Positions 3,235-54,660 of a DNA stretch of 64,000 nucleotides are shown here, piece by piece. The notes under the pieces were generated by a model. It saw nothing but the letters and a program-made list of their open reading frames with translations. It made no database searches and was not told where the DNA came from. Source of the DNA: Macrostomum lignano (lineage: Eukaryota); contig NIVC01000001.1 of assembly GCA_002269645.1 (NCBI GenBank), positions 186,001-250,000 of the forward strand, given 5' to 3'. Position numbers and translations under genes: made by a program. Position 1 is the stretch's first letter. Each line of letters starts with the position of its first letter.

Positions 3235-6062
3235 CAGGGACAACTAAAACCCTCGGGACGCGAAACGAGCCAATTCATGGCAAAAAATCTGAGGGGCTCG
3301 CTTAAAAGTATTGTTCTATGGCTTTTTCAAGTCTTCTCTGCTATCAGGCATTAACGGTTAGATTAAATAGTAAAGCGAGGCAATGTCGAGTATCTAATTT
3401 AAAGAATAGAAACCAGTGATATAATTACAATGTATTTACAATAAAGTAACCGCCATATCAACAAAAAAACTCCAACGGCAAGAAGATAAAAGATGAAAGC
3501 AAAGATGAAACTCCAACGGCAAGAAGATAGAAGCAAATACGGAACTCCAAGGACAAGACGACACAAACAGTCAGTAGCTCGTACATAAAGGAAACGCTGG
3601 AACTTCACCCACTGAGCATCTAACTTCCGAAGCTTTCTATCATGGGATGTCGTCGGTATTGGTGGGAGTTTTGACGAGAGTCTTACTAGTCCTTTGAAAA
3701 AAACGTTGGCTAGCCGACGGGACACACTGTCCATGCTGAACTGTGTCTTAGTTGGAAAGTAAAAGTCCTTAATAACATAAAACAGCTTCTGCACGCGAGT
3801 TGCGCACGTAGGAGAGTGCAGAATAAAACTGCTGTAGCAGAGACAGGATAAGTCTAACAGCCATTGTGGAGGATGGCAAAGCTTTCCGTGAGATAACTCT
3901 TCAGTGAATTCGCTGGCTGGAATGCTCGTCTCTGATATCAAATCTGTTCCTTTGATGCCTTCTTTAGTCGCTGTATAACCTGTCAATTTCCAATTAAGCA
4001 CGGTTTGAATTGTTTTTATGAGATTGTGTAAAACCTCGTTGTGAATTAAATTTTAATTAATATCCAGCTTACCTGCGATATAGTAGAGCGAAGCCATCTC
4101 CGAAATGGAAAGCTCCTCTGATTTAGCAGCACAATTATCAATGATCGCCAGTTCAATTTCATTCAGCTGTTCATTGCAACATTTGCTCCGATCATGCTTG
4201 TAGTCTGCTAATTCAAGGGATGCGAATAATTTCATTCGTCGGAGTCGAGCACTGAGCAGCACTTGCTCCACAGATACATAGTAGTTGCCGCCGCTCATTT
4301 GGCGATACACGCCAAACTCAGCCTCAAGTGGATCACTGTGAAAGTCAGCCAGCAGAACGTAGCTGATTCGTGGGTCGGACAAAAGAACCTCACACATCTC
4401 ACAGGCTCCGCGCAGTGAGTTTACTAGCGCTGACTTGGTCTCGGGCGTCAATGAATGATGGCGAGCTCGGCCTTTTCCACAGTGTCGAATCAAACGAATC
4501 CGCGAGCGCGCTAAGAAATTGTATGCTTTCATCTTGAACGGAATAGACTGGTCGCCTGTCCGGATCCCGTAGTCGTGCGTGTAGATCAGGATTTTTACAA
4601 TTGACAATTTTTCAGAATCTCACTATGGTTTTGATAAATTCCGCAGTGTCTGAGTATCCATCACACTTCAATGCAGCGGCAACCCTTTCATCGAGAACTT
4701 GGAGAGCGAGACTGACTTTAGTTTTCTGAATGCTTGTGGGATAACAGGCCTCATGAGTTAGACATGTGCGCTTGACTACGTGGTCTTTCTCCATTTGGTA
4801 CAGGCGTACCACGTCTGACCATTTAGCGGATATCTGTCTGTCAGCGCCAGGAGGTTGAATGCTTAAAATTCCATTCGCTTCCATTTGCCAATTGTTGCGA
4901 ATGCATTTGATAATGTGAACGAAATCGAACAGCATGAAGACTTCCGACTCATGTGCAGCATCCGTTCCAATCCATGGCTTCTCTCTTCCATCGCTAAATA
5001 AAGCAAAACACTTGCGGTTGGTAGGGTAATTGTCGCTGACGAGAGCAACGACACGGCCACCGTTGTTGTTAATTGCTTTAATACATTGGCTGACGCATTT
5101 TCGCAGAAACTCCGCAGACAAAATTTGTCGGCAATAGTCGGACTACAAACGGTTTTCCACCAAGTAATGGCTTTACCATTATGGCCAAAATTGTCCTAAC
5201 AACCTGGTCCGGATCGTCGACGGCTCGACCCAGAAGGTGACGGCATCGATATCGAACGGACGGTTGTATGTACATTTCGTCAAACATAATTACGCAGTTT
5301 CGCTGAGCTCAATCAAGCAGCTGAAAAGCGTCCATCTCATCGATGTTGCCGCACCTCGCGTCAGAAAGAACACCGCGCTTTTCGGCCTGTCGGTCCTGGT
5401 CTGAAATAAGAGTAAAAATAAAAGTTAGATAATTGTGAGCGGCAAAATCGATATAGACGCTAAGTGTTGAGCAATCTTTAAGTTACGTACCTTGGTTCTG
5501 AACAAAACACGAGCTAGGAACTCCATTAAAAACAGAAGGAGAATTAATTGGCCTTTCGGTACAGTTTTTCTTGACCATTGGAGCATCGCTTGGCCAATGC
5601 TTTACGCACACGCCCATATTGTCAGTCACTCTCTAAAATTTTGGGTTTCAAGTTGTTTGGACGAGACTGGCATGCAGAATTGAAGCGGAATTATGCAGCA
5701 GTAATGACAGCAAATTATCTGGTTTCTTACATGGAGAATATTTGGCAGCGCCTTTCTCCATCGCTCTCGCTCCTGTGGATCTCTGGGAAACCAAATGTCC
5801 GTGTTCGAACGGCTTCAGAGTTGTAATTTGATGAGCACGGAAATACGCTGCACTTTCTTGGCATTTCATCAAGTGAATAAAAAATTCTTCTCTTGATATA
5901 GTTCAGCTTAGCTTCACTGCTGGCCGCAGCTAAAGCAATTTTAATTTGCTTGATAGCAGAGAAGACTTGAAAAAGCCATAGAACAATACTTTTAAGCGAG
6001 CCCCTCAGATTTTTTGCCATGAATTGGCTCGTTTCGCGTCCCGAGGGTTTTAGTTGTCCCTG
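3235..6062 (-). mobile_element. P-superfamily (THAP) DNA transposon, 2828 bp, perfect 112-bp TIRs, 8-bp TSD
   Basis: TIRs 3235-3346 and 5951-6062 are exact reverse complements starting CAGGGACAAC; TSD TGTGCGCC at 3227-3234 and 6063-6070. Confidence 0.95.
3600..5864 (-). pseudogene. THAP-domain P-element transposase, disrupted, with three introns
   Basis: ATG 5864 MPRKCSVFPCSSNY...FGFP...WRKALP...VCVKHWP...PSVF (THAP); then MFDEM, SDNYPTN, FDFVHIIKCIRNNW, SDPLEAEFGVYRQMSGG, LYYIAG|Y. Introns 5730-5633, 5490-5401, 4072-3980 rejoin motifs in frame. Frameshifts near 5790, 5110 and 4480; in-frame TGA near 5310 and at 4612. Confidence 0.88.
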
Positions 6063-40740: not shown

Positions 40741-43700
40741 ATGGCTCATAATCCTAGTCAGCAGCCTGATGTCCCAAAAACTGAACTTGAAGAGATTCAA
40801 ATGGTTATGAACCAGAAAACTGATGAGGTGAGTTGATGCGTACTATTTATTTCTTGTTATGCAAATTCTTTATGCTAAGTCAACATCAATATTTATGTTC
40901 ATGTATACATGTAAAGCTTACAACTACTTGATGTCTTCATGTCTTTTTCCTAACTTCCTTTTTATATAGACAGTAGGAATATCTACTAGTATATATCGTA
41001 ATAGACTTTTTTGCTAGTGTTTGTCATGTTCATGAATTTTTCATATTATTGTACTGTTAGTAGTCAATATATATTTATCTCTTTTTTGTGCTTAGTAGTA
41101 ATAAAAATCAAATTTTACAGAAATCATCCTCTTTTAACCTTAATAGCTTGTAATATAGTTCGCCTGTGTTTGTCTTTGAATTTGAGAAAGAATTTAATCC
41201 TCTCTGTTTTGAACTTTTAGTTTGTAAAATTTTACATACATTAGTCATAAGGAATGAATATATATAAGAAAGATCTTTCATTGGTTGAGAAGTGAGAATG
41301 TCGACTTTGGGGTCTCAACCAATACCTTTAGTAGGCCTGGCTTGTTTCCCCATAAAATATACTCAAAACACAGAATTTTATGAATGCTGACTTATCAGAT
41401 AATTTAGTAGAGGCCTACAGTGTGTAATGTCTGTGCCTAGTGCTAGCGGAGTTATTGCTGATTCTGCCCAATGGCTACTGGACGCCAAAGGAGAGCCGCA
41501 ACCCCTAACCGAAGCCGAAGAGCTGCTGCTAGATGTTGATGGGTGCCAGAGAGTTGTAAGAATGACTGTGCTGTTGTGCTTGTGTCCATCTGTGCGTTTG
41601 TGTTCATCTGTGCTATCTGTCCATCTATGCTGTTGTGCTTGTGCGCATCTGTGCGTCTGTGTCCATCTGTGCTATCTGTCCATCTATGCTGTTGTGCTTG
41701 TGCCCATCTGTGCGTCTGTGTCCATCTGTGCTATCTGTCCATCTATGCTGTTGTGCTTGTGCCCATCTGTGCGTCTGTGTCCATCTGTGCTGTTATGCTT
41801 GTGCGCATCTGTGCGTCTGTGCCCATCTGTGCTGTTGTGCTTGTGCCCATCTGTGCGTCTGTGCCCATCTGTGCTATCTGTCCATCTATGCTGTTGTGCT
41901 TGTGCGCATCTGTGCGTCTGTGTCCATCTGTGCTGTTATGCTTGTGCGCATCTGTGCGTCTGTGCCCATCTGTGCTATCTGTCCATCTATGCTGTTGTGC
42001 TTGTGCCCATCTGTGCGTCTGTGTTCATCTGTGCTATCTGTTCATCTATGCTGTTGCGCTGTCTGTTTATCTGTTCTGTTGCGCTGTCTGTTCATCTGTG
42101 CTGTTGCGCTGTCTGTTCATCTGTGCTGTTGCAAAAGTATAGGCATTAAATTTTTTAAAATTTTGTTCCGATTTCAGTATTACGAACTAAGCTTAACCTT
42201 CAATTTTTGTAGTTTGTAACTACATCGCTTTCGCTTTATCATTACAGTCTCTGGAGTCTACTCGGCGCATGGTTACCCTCTGCGAAGAGGTGAGCATTTT
42301 TGCTGTTTTTTTTTCTGTTCGTGCTTGGCTTAACGTATTCTTCTTAAGCCTCTTAATTTAGCAATTATTGACTCTAACTTTCACTTAGTTAAATATAAAT
42401 TTTTAATAACTAATTTGTTTTCTTTGCCGTGCCGAATATTCATAGTGAATGATTTTATAAATTCAGCAATGCTATATATGCTACGAGCTACAAATATAGA
42501 TTTAAAAAGTTAAAATTATATCCTTAGTAAAACTGCGTTTCTACTTCCAGTTCAGTAGCAAAGAAGAATACATAAGCTATTTTATAAAAATTAAAGCAGC
42601 TGAAATGGCTTTAAATGTTTAAAAGTCAAGAGCTTGCAGTCGTAAACAACTTGCTAATTGATTTAGCCATATGTACATTAGCCAGCGTCACTGAAATGTA
42701 CATGGCAGCTGAGACTGGAATGCCCAGAAAGGCAATAAAAATGGGCGGCGGGCGGAGGTAGAGGTTCTGTGTGGAAAGGCGCAATTAGACGGTTTCAGCT
42801 TAGGGGGTTAAGAGCCAATGAATGAGCCTCGTCTTAAAAAAACATTAAAATTTTTGTTTAACTTGCTACCAGAGTAAATAGTCAAGGCTGCTAAATTGAC
42901 TTTGATAAGTTAGAAGCCCAAGCTTGCAGGCGTAAACAGTTTGCTAATTGGTTCAGCAGTAATGTACATTAGCCAGTCCACTGAAATGTACATAGCAGCT
43001 TTAGGCTGAAAATTCCGAGAAAGGCAATAAAAAATGGGGGGTGGGGGTAGTGTGGAAGGGGAGGCTTCACAAGCGCTAATTTTCATAAGCGCTAACTCAC
43101 CTACTTTCACAAGCGCTAAATTTCACAAACGCTAAACTTCATAACCGCTAACTCACTTACTTTCACAAGCGCTAAACTTCATAATAGCTACAAATTCGCC
43201 ACCTACTTTCACAAACGCTAAATTTCACAAGCGCTAAACTTCAGAATAGCAAAACCACTTACTTTCACAAGCGCTAAACTTCACATTAGCTACGAATTTG
43301 TCACCTACTTTCACAAGCGCTAAACTTCACAAACGCTAAACTTCACAACCGCTAAAACACAAATGTCGCCTACTTTCACAAGCGCTAAACTTCACAAACG
43401 CTAAAACACAAATGTCGCCTACTTTCACAAGCGCTAAACTTCACAAACGCTAACCTTTACAATCCCCAAAACACGAATGTCGGTTTCTTTTACAAGCGCT
43501 AAAATGTTAATTTACTATATATACTAATATACTAATACTAATATACTATACTAATATACTAATATACTATTTTAGCGCTTGTGAAGTTTAGCGCTTGTGA
43601 AAGTAGCCGACATTCGTATTTTAGCGGTTTTTAACGTTTAGCGTTTGTGAAGTTTAGCGCTTGTGAAGTTTAGCGCTTGTGAAAGTAGGCGGCAAATTTT

Positions 43701-46700
43701 TAGCTATTATGAAGTTTAGCGCTTGTGAAAATTAGCGCTTGTGAAAGCGACCCGTGTGGAAAAGCGCGGTTGGAGGGTTTAAGCGGGGGGGGGTATAAGC
43801 CAATAAATGAGCCTTGGCTTTAAAAATACATTAAAATGGTTCTGTTTAACTTACTACTGAACTGAAAGTAGCTTACACGCAAATGTGCTGAGTGGCCTAT
43901 CTAGTTATTCTAGTTTATAAGACAAAGGAATGATAGGTTTCATAGGTAAGTCCCCCCTGACTTCTCCCTGTTTCCTTCAATATTGAGTTGGATTTCCTAA
44001 TAAATATCATTTATTATACGAGTATGATTGCAGTTAACACGGTTTACTCTGGTACCCAATAGCACAATGTTTTACACTGCCAGCATTCTATTTACTCTGT
44101 GCTATTACATTAGATTTGAATTGCAGCAGAGTTATCAGTTATAATATTCAGTACACGTATTTTTTGACTCTCAGGCTAAAGAGGCGGGCATATCCACTCT
44201 TGTCATGCTAGACGATCAGGGCGGTGAGTATGTAATAATAAACCTAAATCTAGCATAGCGCAACTATGAAATCGGATGTGTTGCCAATTATTTGTTAATT
44301 ATTTTTTAATGTTTTTTTAATGCCAGCGAAAATTGCATTCGATTGATTTGAAGGGGGAGGTTCATTCGGGTGATTTTTCAATTTTGTGCGCGTTTTTTTG
44401 TTTTTTGTGCAAGGTTGGTGCTGTCATTATAGGAGCTACTGGGTGAATCAATGAGTCTGTTAGTATTAAGCAGGAGTCGGCAAACTCTTCTCCATCCGGC
44501 CCTTGGATCCTTTAAAACTTCACAATAGCAATCCGACCCGCTAATCTCCTCTCTCCCCTCGTCTCTCCTCTCATCTTCTCACCCACCCCGTCTTTTCTTT
44601 CCTCTCTCATCTTGCCCGCAGCTATTAGCTAAGTGTCTACCAGGCTCTTAAGGTAAAAAAGGTTTGCCGACTCCTGTTAAAGAGTTTATATGGTGGTATT
44701 TATCTGAAATTTAAGCGCAGTAGATCTTATTCCCTGCTTGTAGTCTACTGGTCATGCGTTTATGCGTCAGCATAATGCATCAATTTGTGTGTTAATTTAA
44801 TTATAGTTGATGGATAAACGTTGGATTATCCTTCTTGATTTTTGTTATAATCTTGTCAGCCTCCGCCCCTCTGAGCTGCCTGCTTTTTGCGCGGTGTCTT
44901 GTTGCTTTCCTGCCGTTAGTCTTGTGCTTATTAACAGTTATAATCCCTTTCATTCGAATGAGTTGCGCTTATTAGCAATATAATGGGGTAGACAGGTGAC
45001 CTTACGGATACTTAAACTCGATGATTGGGTTCATAAGGCCTAAATTTCGTATCGCAAAAAAATTCAAGCATCCACCTTTAGGGAACTTTTATTTAATCCA
45101 ATGCCCCTGACTGGGGGCCAGAGAGAAGAGAGAGAATATCTAAGGAGAAGATAGGAGCGAGCATAGGGGAGAGGAGACAGGAGAAAGGAGAGAAGACAGG
45201 AGAGAGGAGAGATGGGAGAAGGGAGAGGAGAGAAGGGAGAAGGGAGAGGAGAGGAGTGGAGAGATGGGAGAAGGGAGAGGAGAGATAGGAGAAGGGAGAG
45301 GAGAGATGGAAGAAGGGAGAGGAGAGATAGGAGAAGGGAGAGGAGAGATGGAAGAAGGGAGAGGAGAGATGGGAGAAGGGAGAGGAGAGATAGGAGAAGG
45401 GAGAGGAGAGATGGAAGAAGGGAGAGGAGAGATGGGAGAAGGGAGAGGAGAGATGGGAGAAGGGAGAGGAGAGATGGGAGAAGGGAGAGGAGAGATGGAA
45501 GAAGGGAAAGGAGAGATGGGAGAAGGGAGAGGAGAGATGGGAGAAGGGAGAGGAGAGATGGGAGAAGGGAGAGGAGAGATGGGAGAAGGGAGAGGAGAGA
45601 TTGGAGAAGGGAGAGGAGAGATGGGAGGGAGAGGAGAGATGGGAGATAGGAGAAGGGAGAGGAGGGATAGGAGAAGGGAGATGAGAGATAGGAGAAGGGA
45701 GAGGAGATTAGAGAGAAGAGAGCTGGGAAGAGACAAACCTTTATTGCTATTGTCAAGTTTCAAAGGACCCGAATGACGGATAGGAAAGTTTCGCTTGTCG
45801 CGGTTTTGCTGAGCCTTGTTTAATGCGATGCAAAAATTACGTCTTATGAACTTTTAGGTCTTATGAAGTTATCAAGCGCCCTCTTTGACTGACAGACAGG
45901 TATTCGCTAATCCATCTTGATTAATATCTTTGCTTATTAATAATTGACATGATGGCTATCTATTTAATTTTAAATAAAGACTTTATTGATTCATCATTTA
46001 GGCTAGAGAGTCTGGACTTCAAGCAATTGTAATGCTTGATGATCAAGGAGGTTTGTTTGATATTTTTTCTTCTAAATACTAAAAGTCAGGGTCGTGAAAT
46101 TCTACTAAAATTTAATTAACAAAATATTGATTAGGCTTAAATCAGGGTGTGTTTTGGTACTAAATTTGAAGAATGCCAGCTGTTGTCTTTGTTGCTTTGA
46201 GTCTTTATTCGGCTTATATTCTCATAATTATCATATTCGGTAGCGAGATGCACCACAGGTTTACTTGGGTTATTGATGCGCATAATTAGATATTCAGTAG
46301 GTTATTGCAACCCAAGTTTATCACCTGTAATAAATCCATTGATTAACAGAGCAACTGGACCGCATCGAGGAGGGCATGGACCACATTAATCAGGACATGA
46401 AAGATGCCGAGAAGAATCTGGACGATCTTAACAAGTGCTGCGGACTCTGCATCCTGCCTTGGAATAAGTGAGTTGTTGCTCAACTTTCTGTTCCCCAACC
46501 TGTGTGTTCCCCAACCTGTGTTCCCCAACCTGTGTGTTCCCCAACCTGTGTGTTCCCCATCCTTTGTGTTCCCCAACCTGTGTGTTCCCCATCCTTTGTG
46601 TTCCCCAACCTGTGTGTTCCCCAACCTGTGTTCCCCAACCTGTGTGTTCCCCAACCTGTGTGTTCCCCATCCTTTGTGTTCCCCAACCTGTGTGTTCCCC

Positions 46701-48541
46701 AACCTGTGTTCCCCAACCTGTGTGTTCCCCAACCTGTGTTCCTCAACCTGTGTTCCCCAACCTGTGTGTTACTTATTCCATTTGTACATGTATAATTTGT
46801 ATACATGCTCAAATTCATATTAGGAAGCATCTGTTTCTTCTTGCTGATGATTCTATTAATAGAAAATACGGGCCAGAAATGTAGAGTTCATGTCACGTGA
46901 TGGGGCCGAGAATTGTAGATACACTGGTAGAATTCGTGCTTGAATTATTTATCAACATTTACTTGGTCTGTGGGACAAGAAAATTATATAGAGGCTGGGA
47001 TAGAAAAATGTTGGTTTAGAGTTCCTGTGTGAGCGAGTCTGGAAGGGAAACAGGAGGCTGCATTTGTCATTTCTTCGAATCTTTATATGGATTGCCCGGC
47101 CAACCAGCTAATTACGCGCGTATCTTAGTTGGCTATTATTGGCATTAATATTATTATAACCCTAAGTAAAGTTTCTTTAGTTGGTTTAGAGACAAAGGTT
47201 TACTTATCTGCACAAGTATGCCTGTATCTAATGCCTCTGTCTGTCTTTTGTCTGTATCTAATACCTCTGTCTGTCTTGTGTCTCTATCTAATACCTCTGT
47301 CTGCCTTGTGTCTCTATCTAATACCTCTGTCTGTCTTGTGTCTCTATCTAATACCTCTGTCTGTCTTGTGTCTCTATCTAATACCTCTGTCTGTCTTGTG
47401 TCTCTATCTAATACCTCTGTCTGTCTTGTGTCTCTATCTAATACCTCTGTCTGTCTTGTGTCTCTATCTAATACCTCTGTCTGTCTTGTGTCTCTATCTA
47501 ATATCTCTGTCTGTCTTGTGTCTCTATCTAATACCTCTGTCTGTCTTGTGTCTCTATCTAATGCCTCTGTCTGTCTTGTGTCTCTATCTAATATCTCTGT
47601 CTGTCTTGTGTCTCTATTTAATGCCTCTGTCTGTCTCGTGTCTCTATCTAATGCCTCTGTCTGTCTTGTGTCTCCACCTAACGCCTCTGGCTGTCTTTTG
47701 TCTCCATCTAATATCTCTGTCTGTCTTTTGTCTCTATCTAATGCCTCTGTCTGTCTTGTGTCTCTATCTGATACATCTGTCTGTCTTGTGTCTCTATCTA
47801 ATATCTCTGTCTGTCTTTTGTCTCTATCTAATGCCTCTGTCTGTCTTGTGTCTCTATCTAATATCTCTGTCTGTCTTTTGTCTCTATCTAATGGCTCTGT
47901 CTGTCTTGTGTCTCTATCTAATGCCTCTGTCTGTCTTGTGTCTCTATCTAATGCCTCTGTCTTGTGTCTCTATCTAATACCTCTGTCTGTCTTGTGTCTC
48001 TATCTAATGCCTCTGTCTGTTGCTAATGTTTGTTTTCTTTGCCGACTCCAACCTCTCTTTTAGTTTCAATATGCTAATCGCAATAAATCATCTTCCTACT
48101 CAGAGCCGGCAAAGGCAGTTTCGACAAGAACTTCAAAAAAGACGAGGATGGCACAGTTAACACTAGCGGGCCGCGCGTTGTTATGGACCAGAACGGCATG
48201 GCGCATCAGGGCGGCTACGTGACTAGGCGAGTATCTGCTGCCAGCTGTGCTTTGCTGCGCTTACCCTACTTTAACTGTTTTAACTTAGTTTTGCATCTTC
48301 AATGCAACTGCAGGATCACCAAGGACGCCAGAGAGGACGAGATGGACAATAATCTGCAGGATGTCAGCACCATGGTTGGCAACCTGCGCAATATGGCCAT
48401 CGATATGGGCAGCGAGATTGAATCGCAGAACAGGCAACTCGACCGCATTAAGGATAAGGTGAGCTTCAGTATTGGCCTCTGTCTTTCATTCGTAGTGCCT
48501 CTCTGTCTTTCGTTGTCTTAGTGTCTGTCTGTCTGTCTATC

Positions 48542-48574
<33 letters not shown>

Positions 48575-48615
48575 ATGTCTGTCTGTCTGTCTGTCTGTCT
48601 ATCTGTCTGTCTTAG

Positions 48616-48712
<97 letters not shown>

Positions 48713-48827
48713 TGTCTTTCTGTTCGTTTGTCTGTCAGTTTCTGTCTACCACAGTATTTTCTACCATAGTGTCTGTCCGTCTCCTTAAAGTATCCGCCAG
48801 CCTGTCTGCCAGAGTGTTTATCTGCCC

Positions 48828-48895
<68 letters not shown>

Positions 48896-48910
48896 GTCTG
48901 TCTTAGTGCC

Positions 48911-48955
<45 letters not shown>

Positions 48956-48972
48956 CTCTGTCTGTCTATCTC

Positions 48973-49007
<35 letters not shown>

Positions 49008-49279
49008 TTCTGTTCGTTTGTCTGTCAGTTTCTGTCTACCACAGTATTTTCTACCATAGTGTCTGTCCGTCTCCTTAAAGTATCCGCCAGCCTGTCTGCC
49101 AGAGTGTTTATCTGCCCGTCTGGCTGCCTGTCTGTTTTGCTTGTGTCTGTGACCTGTAAACTTCCCTCTGGTCTAACAGAATTTAATAGAATTTGAATTT
49201 TCTCCCTTAACTACAGGGCGACTCTAACCAGACCCGTATTGAAGAGGCCAACAAGCGGGCCAACAAGATGCTGAAATGA
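40741..49279 (+). CDS. SNAP25: SNAP-25 (Qbc SNARE), 208 aa
   Basis: Exons 40741-40827, 42248-42289, 44175-44223 or 46002-46050, 46350-46467, 48104-48226, 48314-48458 and 49217-49279 give 627 nt in frame: [61 protein letters not shown]. Confidence 0.96.
41427..41555 (+). CDS. SNAP25: Probable alternative first coding exon (1b) of SNAP-25
   Basis: ATG 41427, 43 codons, phase-0 donor GTT|GTAAGA; its end [18 protein letters not shown] aligns without gaps to exon 1a [18 protein letters not shown]. Confidence 0.68.
41565..42130. repeat. TG-rich complex minisatellite directly after the exon 1b donor
   Basis: Repeats of TGTGCT/TTGTGCCCATC/TGTGCGTC; source of the Cys/Val-rich ORFs. Confidence 0.9.
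43059..43753. mobile_element. Foldback MITE (family 2) in a SNAP-25 intron
   Basis: Arms of (T)TTCACAAGCGCTAAAC subrepeats inverted about a (TATACTAA)n core; ends GGGAGGC...GCGACCC; TSD GTGTGGAAG/GTGTGGAAA; it interrupts the second copy of a local duplication (about 42641-42885 vs 42932-43870). Confidence 0.85.
44175..44223 (+). CDS. SNAP25: SNAP-25 exon 3a ([16 protein letters not shown])
   Basis: 49 bp, TCAG| acceptor and |GTGAGT donor. Confidence 0.92.
44471..44676. mobile_element. hAT-like MITE
   Basis: Perfect 15-bp TIR CAGGAGTCGGCAAAC / GTTTGCCGACTCCTG; no clean TSD. Confidence 0.65.
45170..45720. repeat. 21-bp purine minisatellite between exons 3a and 3b
   Basis: Unit GAGAAGGGAGAGGAGAGATGG. 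Confidence 0.95.
46002..46050 (+). CDS. SNAP25: SNAP-25 exon 3b ([16 protein letters not shown])
   Basis: 49 bp, TTTAG| acceptor and |GTTTGT donor, same phases as 3a, no stop. Confidence 0.88.
46488..46770. repeat. 14-16-bp minisatellite after the SNAP-25 exon 4 donor
   Basis: Unit CCCCAACCTGT(GT)GTT. Confidence 0.93.
47215..48020. repeat. 30-bp minisatellite before the SNAP-25 exon 5 acceptor
   Basis: Unit TCTCTATCTAATACCTCTGTCTGTCTTGTG. Confidence 0.95.
48500..49150. repeat. (TGTC)n microsatellite with an internal duplicated block
   Basis: TGTC runs; block 48715-48830 recurs at about 49005-49125. Confidence 0.92.
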
Positions 49280-50655: not shown

Positions 50656-51147
50656 ATGTATCGAAATGTATGTAATGCTTTCATGTCGTCACCAGCAGCC
50701 GCTAGCACAGGCCGCCTGTCCTGGCTGGCCAGGCTGTACATCTACTCGCTGCACGGTCTGGCAATCGAGGTGTGCTTCTGCGCTGTCTGGTACCTCATCG
50801 AGCGGTTCGAAGTCCGCCTGCACGGCTACTCGAGCGTCTGGTCGCTGCCGATTTACGGCCTGTCCCTGCTGTGCATGGAGGCGCAGTCGGACTGGCTGCA
50901 GTCGCGCCAGGTGCCAATGCCACTGCGCGGCCTGGTGTACCTGGCCTGGACCTACGCCTGGGAGTTCGCCTGCGGCAGCGTGTTAAAGCTGTTTGGCGCC
51001 AATAGCTGGGATTACACAGACTATGCCAATTATCATATTTATGGTTTGGTTAATTTTGACTACGCCCCATTGTGGTTCACTTCGGGCCTGCTGTGCGAAC
51101 GCTATCTGCTTGTGTGGGCTCGGAGTCTTCGCTGGGACTCTGGATAA
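50656..51147 (+). CDS. TMEM229B: TMEM229-family membrane protein, single exon
   Basis: RLYIYSLHGL..EV.F, GYSSVWSLPIYG, YLAWTYAWEF, SWDYT, GLVNFDYAPLWF match the TMEM229B pattern; start could be 50656 or 50683. Confidence 0.85.
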   Translation: MYRNVCNAFMSSPAAASTGRLSWLARLYIYSLHGLAIEVCFCAVWYLIERFEVRLHGYSSVWSLPIYGLSLLCMEAQSDWLQSRQVPMPLRGLVYLAWTYAWEFACGSVLKLFGANSWDYTDYANYHIYGLVNFDYAPLWFTSGLLCERYLLVWARSLRWDSG

Positions 51148-52373: not shown

Positions 52374-54660
52374 ATGGTGTCCCTCATGCCAATCTCGGTT
52401 CTGTCGCAGGGAGCGGAGGAGGAGCGCTCGGAGACCGCCCGCCTGTCCTCCTTTGTCGGCGCCATCGCTGTTGGGGATCTGATCAAGAGCACCCTGGGCC
52501 CGAAGGGCATGGACAAGATCCTGCTGGGCGGTCGCAATGGCGACGGCGTGGAGGTCACCAACGACGGCGCCACCATTTTGAAGTCGCTCGGCGTGGACAA
52601 TCCGGCAGCTAAGATTCTTGTCAACATGAGCAAAACACAGGACGACGAAGTTGGCGACGGCACCACCTCGGTCACCGTGTTGGCTGCCGAGCTGCTTCGC
52701 GAAGCCGAGCAGATGATGGCGCACAAGCTGCACCCGCAGACCATCATCTCCGGCTGGCGCAAGGCCTGCGACGCCGCTCGTCAGGCTCTGGAATCGGCCG
52801 CTATTGACAACTCAAAGGACACGGCCAGGTTCCGCGAGGACCTCATGAACATTGCCCGGACTACGCTGAGCAGCAAGCTGCTCACACAGCACCGCGATCA
52901 CTTCGCCGAGCTGGCCGTCAACGCCATCCTTCGGCTGAAAGGATCCGGCAACCTGGAGGCTATCCAGCTGATCAAGAAGCTGGGCGGATTGCTCGGCGAT
53001 TCCTACCTGGACGAGGGATTCCTGCTGGATAAGAAGATCGGAGCTCAGCAGCCGAAGCGAATTGAGAAAGCCAAGGTGTTGATTGCTAATACGCCAATGG
53101 ACTCTGATAAGATCAAGGTGTTTGGCTCCAAGATTAAGGTAACTTCAATTGGTCTCTGTCATTCTGGATATTAGGTCTCATTCACGCCATTCTTTTAAAT
53201 CCCAGAATTGCATGACGTCATTCTCCCAAATCTCAGAATTGCATGACGTCATTCTCCCAGATCCCAGAATTGCATGACACATTCACACAGATCCCCCAAT
53301 TGCATGACGTCATTCTCCCAGATCCCAGAATTGCATGGCGTCATTCTCCCAGATCCATGAACTGCATGACGTCATTATCCCAGATCCTCAAATAGCATGA
53401 CGCCATTATTCCAGATCCCTAAATCGCATAACATCATTCTCCCAGATCCCAGAATTGCATGACGTCATTCTCCCCCAGAGTCCCAGATCCCAAATCGCAT
53501 TTCCTCCATCCGAAACGAACCTGCCTCAATCCAGGTGGACGCCGTGGCCAAACTAAGCGAACTCGAGCTGGCCGAGAAGCAGAAGATGAAGGCCAAGGTT
53601 GAGAAGATTGTCGCCCACGGCTGCAACGTGTTCATCAACCGGCAGCTCATCTACAACTATCCCGAGCAGCTGTTCTCCGATGCCGGAGTTGTGTCCATTG
53701 AGCACGCCGACTTTGAGGGCATCGAGCGCCTGGCTCTGGTTAGCTCTTTTCTCAAATTTATGCATTCGTGTCCCAATGTTAATCAGTCCTGTATTTGTCC
53801 CTTCATCTTGATTACTATATTCACCTTTTAATTCCCTTTCTTCATTCCCTTCACTCTCATTCACCATTCCCTTCACTCTCATTCACCATTCCCTTCACTC
53901 TCATTCACCATTCCCTTCACTCTCATTTACCATTCCCTTCACTCTCATTCACCATTCCCTTCACTCTCATTCACCATTCCCTTCACTCTCATTCACCATT
54001 CCCTTCACTCTCATTCACCATTCCCTTCATCCCCAGGTACTCGGCGGCGAGATTGTATCAACATTCGACTCGCCCGGCTCGGTGAAGCTGGGCGAATGCG
54101 ACCTCATAGAGGAGGTGATGATCGGCGAGGACAAGCTGATCCGCATGAGCGGCGTGCCCCTTGGCGAGGCCTGCACCATCGTGCTGCGCGGCGCCACCCA
54201 GCAGATTTTGGACGAGGCCGACCGGTCTCTGCACGACGCCCTGTGCGTGCTGCAGCAGACTGTGCAGGACTCCCGCGTCATCTGCGGCGGCGGCTGCGCC
54301 GAAGCCCTCATGGCCGTGGCTGTCAGCCGCCTGGCCGCCCAGACAGCCGGCAAGGAGGCCATCGCCATGGAGGCCTTCGCCAGGGCGCTGCTGCAGCTGC
54401 CCACCGCCATCGCTGACAACGGCGGCTACGACTCGTCCGACCTGGTCGCCCAGATTCGCGCCTCGCACGTGGCCGGCCAGTCCTACATCGGGCTGAACAT
54501 GACGGACGGCGTGCCGGCCGACATGCGCCAGCTGGGCATCACCGAGTCGCTGCGCGTCAAACGCCAGGTGCTGCTGTCGGCTGCCGAGGCCGCCGAAATG
54601 ATTCTGCGCGTTGACGACATTCTGAAGGCCTCGCCCAGGCCGCGCCGCCAGGAGCACTGA
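52374..54660 (+). CDS. CCT2: T-complex protein 1 subunit beta, 530 aa
   Basis: Exons 52374-53138, 53535-53738 and 54037-54660 (1593 nt); [32 protein letters not shown]. Confidence 0.97.
53190..53490. repeat. 31-bp TGACGTCA-containing minisatellite in CCT2 intron 1
   Basis: Unit CCCAGATCCCAGAATTGCATGACGTCATTCT; five perfect TGACGTCA. Confidence 0.9.
53830..54030. repeat. 22-bp minisatellite abutting the CCT2 intron 2 acceptor
   Basis: Unit CATTCCCTTCACTCTCATTCAC. Confidence 0.93.

What the first reader, a model, noticed from the sequence alone, without database searches (positions are those of the whole stretch)
44175..46050. SNAP-25 has a duplicated, obligately mutually exclusive exon that is not the vertebrate exon 5
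Seen: two homologous 49-bp exons with matching phases and intact splice sites, [16 protein letters not shown] (44175-44223) and [16 protein letters not shown] (46002-46050). Because 49 is not divisible by 3, using both or neither shifts the frame. Synonymous sites are heavily diverged while the frame and MLDDQG are kept, which implies old selection. Known: vertebrate SNAP-25a/b comes from duplication of the 118-bp exon 5, which is single here (46350-46467). Inference: an independent, convergent isoform switch one exon upstream, changing residues in the Qb SNARE helix. I cannot check whether it has been described.
Basis: partly seen in the sequence, partly recalled or inferred. Interest (0 to 1): 0.85.

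Follow-up and report, generated by a model that had tools for sequence, protein, structure and literature searches.

The report
Flatworm SNAP-25 duplicated alternative 49-bp exon
One SNAP-25 gene of the flatworm Macrostomum lignano carries two homologous 49-bp exons that can only be used one at a time, but insects, molluscs and annelids duplicate the same exon and the fly case is already catalogued, so this is a new example of a known arrangement.

Summary
Window 44175-44223 (3a, [16 protein letters not shown]) and 46002-46050 (3b, [16 protein letters not shown]) are two 49-nt, same-phase, AG/GT-bounded homologous exons of a SNAP-25 gene of Macrostomum lignano. Using both or neither gives an early stop codon. 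Synonymous sites are saturated (pS 0.84) and replacement sites are constrained (pN 0.21), so 3b has long been kept as coding sequence.

The event is distinct from the vertebrate exon 5a/5b duplication; the 118-nt exon is single here. It is not new as a kind. The same 49-nt exon occurs in 2-3 tandem copies in a wasp, a snail and an annelid locus. Database isoforms in many insects (Drosophila included), crustaceans and molluscs differ only in this 16-residue block. A 2022 catalogue already lists fly Snap25 against human SNAP25 as "different region, convergent".

New here:
- The flatworm copy is unannotated.
- It is present in one of three M. lignano paralogues and absent from Schistosoma.
- 3b most resembles flatworm-type 3a, which suggests a separate, lineage-specific duplication.

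Whether 3b is expressed could not be tested. Verdict: new member of a known kind, modest interest.

The parts
40741..40827 (+). SNAP-25 coding exon 1a ([29 protein letters not shown]), phase 0, donor gtgagt
   Evidence: 100% match to UniProt A0A1I8H8I6 of M. lignano
41427..41555 (+). Candidate alternative first coding exon 1b ([43 protein letters not shown]), donor gtaaga, phase 0
   Evidence: homologous 'PLTEAEEL...' exons lie in intron 1 of both M. lignano paralogues; alternative first exons also in Schistosoma and Biomphalaria
42248..42289 (+). Exon 2, 42 nt ([14 protein letters not shown])
44175..44223 (+). Exon 3a, 49 nt ([16 protein letters not shown]+g): the canonical flatworm version, used in all existing M. 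lignano gene models
44224..46001 (+). Intron between 3a and 3b (1778 nt), filled with repeats: a roughly 205-bp element with terminal inverted repeats at 44471-44676, and a 21-nt GA-rich minisatellite at 45168-45722
   Evidence: its long ORFs are repeat artefacts
46002..46050 (+). Exon 3b, 49 nt ([16 protein letters not shown]+g): the duplicated alternative exon, with a weaker donor (gtttgt); not in any existing gene model
46350..46467 (+). Exon 4, 118 nt ([40 protein letters not shown]): the equivalent of vertebrate exon 5, single copy here
48104..48226 (+). Exon 5, 123 nt, with a GC donor (AG|gcgagt)
   Evidence: the GC donor explains why model P0001 lacks VTRITK
48314..48458 (+). Exon 6, 145 nt (second SNARE motif)
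49217..49279 (+). Exon 7 with the stop codon ([20 protein letters not shown]); no second terminal exon found

Best explanation
The window holds one of three SNAP-25 paralogues of Macrostomum lignano (contig NIVC01000001.1). The 49-nt exon that encodes human-equivalent residues 39-54 of the first SNARE helix has been tandemly duplicated. Because 49 is not a multiple of 3, only transcripts with exactly one copy encode SNAP-25. Transcripts with both copies or neither hit an early stop codon and would presumably be removed by nonsense-mediated decay (inferred). 3a is the default exon: it has a consensus donor and is the only form in existing models. 3b, with a weaker donor (gtttgt), is a regulated alternative, probably chosen in a subset of neurons or secretory cells (inferred). 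3b changes six residues in human numbering: K40R, A42S, I44L, S45Q, T46A and L47I. It keeps G43, L50, D51, D52 and the zero-layer Q53. This would subtly alter packing in the membrane-distal half of the SNARE bundle and the edge of the synaptotagmin-1 primary interface, and so tune release properties (inferred). The arrangement belongs to a widespread protostome class of mutually exclusive 49-nt exon clusters in SNAP-25. The flatworm 3b most likely arose by a separate duplication of a flatworm-type exon.
For: Gene identity: the isoform built with 3a is identical to UniProt A0A1I8H8I6 at every aligned residue (that model lacks VTRITK and the last exon); the window is 100% identical to L006; Pfam PF00835 at 45.6 bits; PDB SNAP-25 at E=8.5e-70. 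Exon pair, frame logic and stop codons. Coding constraint on 3b: pS 0.84 against pN 0.205, and none of 400,000 neutral-decay replicates kept the open frame, both splice sites and >=10/16 aa identity. Both exons are intact in the second genomic copy L005. Same class elsewhere: 49-nt AG/GT tandem copies between the 42-nt and 118-nt exons in Biomphalaria (2), Owenia (3) and Cotesia (3). Isoforms or gene models of one species differ only in this block in molluscs and arthropods, Drosophila included. Fly Snap25 is catalogued as 'different region, convergent'. Separate origin: among 105 distinct versions of the peptide, 3b scores highest against flatworm 3a (BLOSUM62 58, 10/16) and no more than 51 against any alternative (B/C) copy of other phyla. 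It shares the rare A at position 1 (4/105) and D at position 14 (6/105) with flatworm 3a. The two other M. lignano paralogues and Schistosoma have one copy. Residue mapping: gapless alignment, M. lignano position = human + 5. K40, D51 and E52 are synaptotagmin-1 primary-interface residues (PMC7220375).
Against: No RNA evidence for 3b. Neither full-length isoform sequence is in the protein collection, all M. lignano models use 3a, and a focused short-query search failed technically. The 3b donor departs from the consensus at +3 and +4. The comparison with L005 is uninformative because the flanking intron is about as conserved as the exons. Sixteen residues cannot resolve orthology; the shared A1 and D14 could come from gene conversion or parallel constraint. 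The SNARE layer assignment (T46 = layer -2) comes from heptad arithmetic and memory of the published SNARE structure, not from a model made here. NMD enforcement and cell-type specificity are inferences.
Confidence: 0.75

Rival explanations
1. 3b is the orthologue of the ancient protostome alternative copy (the SQDVG/SHEVG type of molluscs, annelids and arthropods). It was retained in one M. lignano paralogue and lost in the other two and in parasitic flatworms. The cluster would then predate the protostome radiation.
For: Same position and same order (canonical copy first, divergent copy after) in the snail, annelid, wasp and flatworm loci. 3b shares I at position 9 with mollusc and dipteran B copies and R at position 2 with Biomphalaria 3b. 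Synonymous sites between 3a and 3b are saturated, so great age is allowed.
Against: 3b is closer to flatworm 3a than to any B or C copy. It lacks the recurrent S-Q/E-D-V-G signature and carries the flatworm-specific A1 and D14. This reading needs at least three independent losses. pN of 3b against Biomphalaria 3a and 3b is the same, 0.27 and 0.26.
Confidence: 0.3
2. 3b is a relic pseudo-exon: once functional or never used, now silent intron sequence that merely has not yet decayed.
For: No transcript or model contains it. The donor is weak. The two other paralogues and Schistosoma do without it. The two genomic copies are too similar to show ongoing constraint.
Against: Open frame, exact length, both splice sites and the MLDDQG core are kept, while synonymous sites are saturated. 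Neutral simulation gives under 1e-5 for this. The same exon is a proven alternative in many other protostomes. Recent silencing cannot be excluded.
Confidence: 0.1
3. The similarity is chance, or 3b belongs to a repeat or transposon or to a gene on the other strand.
For: The intron is full of minisatellites and repeat elements.
Against: E=1.3e-4 in the window with the next hit at E=6, plus exact boundaries and phase. 3b lies in unique sequence outside the repeat arrays. No ORF of 50 aa or more on either strand overlaps it.
Confidence: 0.01

Closest known systems
Arthropod Snap25 49-nt exon cluster (D. melanogaster Snap25, FBgn0011288; RefSeq isoforms in many insects and crustaceans; Cotesia typhae locus)
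   Same: The same exon is duplicated (between the 42-nt and 118-nt exons), with the same 49-nt length and phase, so the frame forces mutual exclusion. Isoforms differ only in the 16-residue block equivalent to human 39-54. Catalogued as convergent with the vertebrate event.
   Different: Arthropods have up to three copies (A, B, C). Their alternative copies often lose the acidic residue at human position 52 (MLDHQG). The flatworm has two copies, keeps DD, and its 3b does not resemble the arthropod B or C copies.
Mollusc and annelid SNAP-25 exon 3a/3b(/3c) (Biomphalaria glabrata, Owenia fusiformis; RefSeq isoforms of Physella, Mya, Mercenaria, Pomacea, Littorina, Babylonia, Haliotis)
   Same: Tandem 49-nt AG/GT copies in the same place and order. 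Isoform pairs differ only in this block. An alternative first coding exon is also shared.
   Different: The mollusc B copy has a conserved SQDVG(V/I)KTIV signature that 3b lacks. Molluscs also have alternative last exons, which are not found in the window.
Vertebrate SNAP-25a/b (mutually exclusive exons 5a/5b, 118 nt)
   Same: A tandem duplicated exon in the first SNARE helix of the same protein, used mutually exclusively, producing isoforms with a few substitutions. 118 is also not divisible by 3. (Johansson et al. 2008, PMC2581893.)
   Different: A different exon: residues about 55-94, which include the palmitoylated cysteine cluster, against residues 39-54 here. Separate origin: the 118-nt exon is single in the window.

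Membership tests
SNAP-25 (Qbc-SNARE) gene | Sequence homology to SNAP-25 over both SNARE motifs and the linker domain | tested here: met
   PF00835 at 45.6 bits (cut-off 25); PDB SNAP-25 E=8.5e-70 over residues 13-207; the 3a isoform is identical at all aligned residues to M. lignano A0A1I8H8I6
SNAP-25 (Qbc-SNARE) gene | Zero-layer glutamines and a cysteine cluster after the first helix | tested here: met
   The Q aligned with human Q53 is kept in both 3a and 3b (MLDDQG). CCGLC is present in exon 4. The second-helix Q lies within the aligned SQNRQ block.
Mutually exclusive exon cluster / tandem duplicated exon substitution | Neighbouring internal exons of equal length, the same phase and intact splice sites | tested here: met
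   49 nt each, phase 0 in and 1 out, AG/GT boundaries, no other exon between them
Mutually exclusive exon cluster / tandem duplicated exon substitution | Sequence homology between the exons | tested here: met
   10/16 aa, 32/49 nt, E=1.3e-4 in the window
Mutually exclusive exon cluster / tandem duplicated exon substitution | Transcripts contain exactly one of the exons (RNA evidence) | not testable with these tools
   No M. lignano transcript data could be reached. Frame logic predicts exclusivity.
Protostome SNAP-25 49-nt exon cluster (fly/mollusc/annelid type) | The duplicated exon is the one between the 42-nt exon and the 118-nt exon | tested here: met
   Same flanking exons in the window, Biomphalaria, Owenia and Cotesia
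Protostome SNAP-25 49-nt exon cluster (fly/mollusc/annelid type) | The alternative copy is orthologous to the B/C copies of other phyla (common descent) | tested here: inconclusive
   3b is closest to flatworm 3a (58 against no more than 51) and shares A1 and D14 with it. It also shares I9 with B copies. 16 residues are too few to decide.
Vertebrate SNAP-25a/b exon 5 duplication | Two copies of the 118-nt exon | tested here: not met
   Only one match to human residues 55-94 in the window, at 46349-46468

The most novel reading that the evidence does not exclude
The 49-nt exon of SNAP-25 encodes SNARE layers about -4 to 0 and three of the five SNAP-25 residues of the synaptotagmin-1 primary interface. 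It may be a hot spot where tandem duplication into mutually exclusive copies happened repeatedly and independently: in arthropods, in molluscs and annelids, and, as seen here, in a macrostomid flatworm. That would make it a protostome counterpart of the vertebrate 5a/5b switch that has never been analysed as such. The flatworm copy would be a separate third or fourth origin.
Probability: 0.45. Interest if true: 0.5.

Novelty: new member of a known kind. Interest (0 to 1): 0.33.

Why it matters
SNAP-25a/b is a textbook case of a small exon swap that tunes neurotransmitter release. This work shows that protostomes swap the neighbouring exon instead, and that a flatworm probably reached the same solution on its own. 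That supports the published view that tandem exon duplication recurs convergently in synaptic genes. It also points to residues 39-54 as a tunable part of the SNARE machine; they include K40, D51 and E52 of the synaptotagmin-1 interface. Practically, the M. lignano annotation misses exon 3b and probably exon 1b, and truncates or mis-splices this gene. M. lignano is a transgenic model in which isoform-specific reporters or knock-outs could be made. The general phenomenon is already annotated and catalogued for other animals, so the gain is incremental.

Tried and rejected
1. Searching for 3b-containing proteins. The full-length 3b isoform query returned only a-type flatworm sequences. An exact look-up found neither full-length isoform sequence. 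A 40-aa query centred on 3b failed for lack of indexed words and cost one search. Expression therefore stays untested.

2. Comparing the two genomic copies (L005 and L006) as a test of selection. There were 0 differences in 3a and in 3b, but the flanking intron is also about 97-98% identical, so the test has no power.

3. Looking for docking-site/selector RNA pairings in the exon 2 to exon 4 interval. The inverted repeats found are all minisatellite or repeat-element arms (43100-43750; 44487-44532 against 45743-45788). None can be argued to control the splice choice.

4. Looking for a third copy of the exon, or for a second 118-nt or terminal exon, in the window. None was found.

5. Testing orthology of 3b by pN/pS and BLOSUM62 scores against copies from other phyla. 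No B-type affinity appeared.

6. Literature. Six of the eight full-text searches looked for a description of an invertebrate SNAP-25 alternative exon and found no paper that discusses one. A seventh search led to the supplementary tables of PMC9741552, the only record found.

7. Five locus look-ups found no gene on record: Physella, Cloeon (two proteins) and Chironomus. One further look-up returned an intronless Nesidiocoris copy that was useless for exon structure.

Full report
**What is there.** Reading window 43900-46700 confirms the finding to the base.
- 3a is 44175-44223: ...ctctcag|GCTAAAGAG...CAGGGCG|gtgagt.
- 3b is 46002-46050: ...catttag|GCTAGAGAG...CAAGGAG|gtttgt.
- Both are 49 nt, begin in phase 0 and leave one base for the next codon.
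- A tblastn of human SNAP-25 and manual splice-site reading give the whole gene on the + strand: e1 40741-40827, e2 42248-42289, 3a, 3b, e4 46350-46467 (118 nt), e5 48104-48226 (GC donor), e6 48314-48458, e7 49217-49279.
- With either 3a or 3b the product is an open 208-aa SNAP-25. With both, a stop appears at the first 3b codon. With neither, a stop appears 17 codons into exon 4.
- The product hits Pfam PF00835 and solved SNAP-25 structures at E=8.5e-70.

**More than chance, and under selection.**
- The two exons share 32/49 nt and 10/16 aa. Third codon positions match at 6/16; first and second positions together match at 25/32.
- The 3a peptide finds 3b at E=1.3e-4 in the 64-kb window, with the next hit at E=6. 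Both splice dinucleotides also sit at homologous positions.
- Nei-Gojobori counting gives pS 0.84 (saturated) and pN 0.205.
- In 400,000 neutral-decay simulations at the observed third-position divergence, none kept the frame, both splice sites and >=10/16 identity.
- 3b has therefore been maintained as coding sequence for most of its history. No ORF on either strand and no repeat array overlaps it.

**Source and copies.**
- The isoform built with 3a is identical, at every aligned residue, to UniProt A0A1I8H8I6 of Macrostomum lignano. That model lacks VTRITK and the last exon.
- The window is 100% identical to contig NIVC01000001.1 of assembly GCA_002269645.1 (L006).
- A second copy (L005, NIVC01000172.1) keeps 3a and 3b with no differences. 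Its flanking intron is almost as conserved, so this says little.
- All existing models use 3a or are truncated. The NCBI model starts inside exon 4.
- The two other M. lignano SNAP-25 paralogues (81-84% identical; L001-L004) and Schistosoma mansoni (L007) have a single 49-nt exon of the 3a type, with short introns after it.

**The same exon is duplicated widely.**
- In the first homology search, isoforms of one species differed in exactly this 16-residue block: Physella, Mya, Mercenaria, Pomacea, Littorina, Babylonia and Haliotis. So did two gene models of the mayfly Cloeon.
- Genomic loci confirm tandem 49-nt AG/GT exons between the 42-nt and 118-nt exons:

| Species | Locus | Copies (locus position, peptide) |
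|---|---|---|
| Biomphalaria glabrata | L009 | 38144 SKEAGIKTLVMLDEQG; 65558 SRDVGVRTIVMLDEQG |
| Owenia fusiformis (annelid) | L010 | three copies at 53416, 56539, 57643 |
| Cotesia typhae (wasp) | L012 | three copies at 3928 (A), 7329 (C), 8640 (B) |

- A search with the mayfly B isoform shows up to three variants across insects and crustaceans: A SKEAGIRTLVALDDQG; B SHEVGMKTLVMLDEQG; and C, which is variable and often MLDHQG.
- Drosophila yakuba, D. santomea and D. innubila carry A or B (SAEVGMRSIVMLDEQG).

**Literature.**
- I found no paper that discusses an invertebrate SNAP-25 alternative exon. Johansson et al. 2008 treat only vertebrate exon 5 and note that Drosophila lacks that duplication.
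- The supplementary tables of Martinez-Gomez et al. 2022 (PMC9741552) do record it. Table S4 lists D. melanogaster Snap25 among genes with tandem duplicated exon substitutions. Table S5 lists SNAP25/Snap25 under "Different region, convergent".

**Origin of the flatworm copy.**
- Among 105 distinct versions of the peptide, 3b is most similar to flatworm 3a (BLOSUM62 58, 10/16). Its best score against any alternative copy of another phylum is 51.
- It shares with 3a the rare alanine at position 1 (4/105) and aspartate at position 14 (6/105). It lacks the S-Q/E-D-V-G signature of mollusc, crustacean and many insect alternative copies.
- Together with its absence from two paralogues and from Schistosoma, this favours a lineage-specific duplication. 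I put that at about 0.55-0.6, against about 0.3 for retention of an ancient copy.
- Sixteen residues and saturated synonymous sites cannot settle the question.

**Likely mechanism.**
- Shown: only single-copy inclusion preserves the reading frame. 3a has a consensus donor and 3b a weaker one.
- Inferred: aberrant products are removed by nonsense-mediated decay, and the choice is regulated by cell type. The intervening 1.8-kb intron rules out steric exclusion. I found no credible competing RNA pairings; the inverted repeats are all repeat elements.
- The alignment to human SNAP-25 is gapless here, with an offset of +5. The exon covers human residues 39-54, and 3b changes K40R, A42S, I44L, S45Q, T46A and L47I.
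- K40, D51 and E52 belong to the SNAP-25 side of the synaptotagmin-1 primary interface (mutant K40A/D51A/E52A/E55A/D166A; PMC7220375). M. lignano 3b keeps the acidic pair, whereas many arthropod C copies and mollusc B copies replace position 52.
- By heptad arithmetic from Q53, T46 is the layer -2 residue. This rests on my recollection of the published SNARE structure and was not modelled here. T is present at that position in 100 of 105 versions, so the alanine in 3b is the most unusual change.
- The probable effect is fine tuning of N-terminal zippering and of regulator binding (inference).

**Verdict.** This is a new, unannotated flatworm member, probably of independent origin, of a known and widespread kind of alternative exon. 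The main gap is the absence of RNA evidence for 3b.

Noticed in passing
window 41427-41555 (+): A second candidate first coding exon (1b) sits in intron 1: [43 protein letters not shown], with its own ATG, donor gtaaga and phase 0. Homologous 'PLTEAEEL...' exons occur in both M. lignano paralogues (L001 14475-14528, L003 12433-12516) and in L005. Schistosoma (L007 5088-5210) and Biomphalaria (L009 17481-17573) also have alternative first exons. It is not in any M. lignano model seen.
   Followed up: partly
window 48226/48227: The exon 5 donor is GC (ACTAG|gcgagt), so this is a GC-AG intron. The UniProt model A0A1I8H8I6 skips VTRITK here, apparently because a GT donor and a downstream AG were forced.
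   Followed up: partly
window 46350 onward; L006 10001-12904: The NCBI gene model for this locus (PAA88907.1 / PAA94740.1, 140 aa) starts at a methionine inside exon 4 and misses exons 1-3. The UniProt models are truncated at the C-terminus. The gene is therefore mis-annotated in all records seen.
   Followed up: yes
window 41566-42132, 43065-43745, 45168-45722, 46489-46770, 47225-48020, 48522-49037: Every intron of the gene carries a large minisatellite or microsatellite array (units of 59/143, 16, 21, 16, 30 and 4 nt). The 43065-43745 array is two blocks in inverted orientation. These arrays produce long spurious ORFs.
   Followed up: partly
window 44471-44676 and 44487-44532 / 45743-45788: A roughly 205-bp element is bounded by 15-nt terminal inverted repeats (CAGGAGTCGGCAAAC ... 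GTTTGCCGACTCCTG), which looks like a miniature inverted-repeat transposable element (MITE). A related segment lies in inverted orientation next to the GA-rich minisatellite. Both are inside the 3a-3b intron.
   Followed up: no
L005 (NIVC01000172.1) against the window: The second genomic copy of the whole gene is 89-93% identical in BLAST blocks. It has a P9H change, a few synonymous changes and a TGA-to-TAA stop change. The intron after exon 4 is much longer (about 3.6 kb against 1.6 kb). This fits the known partial genome duplication of M. lignano, or divergent haplotypes.
   Followed up: partly
L011 (Nesidiocoris tenuis AP028921.1, 1001-1630): This is an intronless SNAP-25 coding sequence (630 nt, translates directly), so it is a candidate retrogene in a mirid bug.
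   Followed up: no
proteins P0035/P0049, P0034/P0065, P0052/P0024, P0056/P0113: Mollusc SNAP-25 genes also have two alternative last exons (for example SESNEERIKEANTRAAKLLKTA against GDSLNDRVEGANKRANKILRNQ). Some insect isoforms differ there too. The M. lignano window has only one terminal exon.
   Followed up: partly
window about 50701-51147, 52374-54660, 56927 onward (+): The downstream neighbours, as called in the public record, are a 148-aa PF06541 protein, a TCP-1/Cpn60 chaperonin subunit (530 aa) and an acetyl-CoA synthetase. The same order is seen in L005.
   Followed up: no
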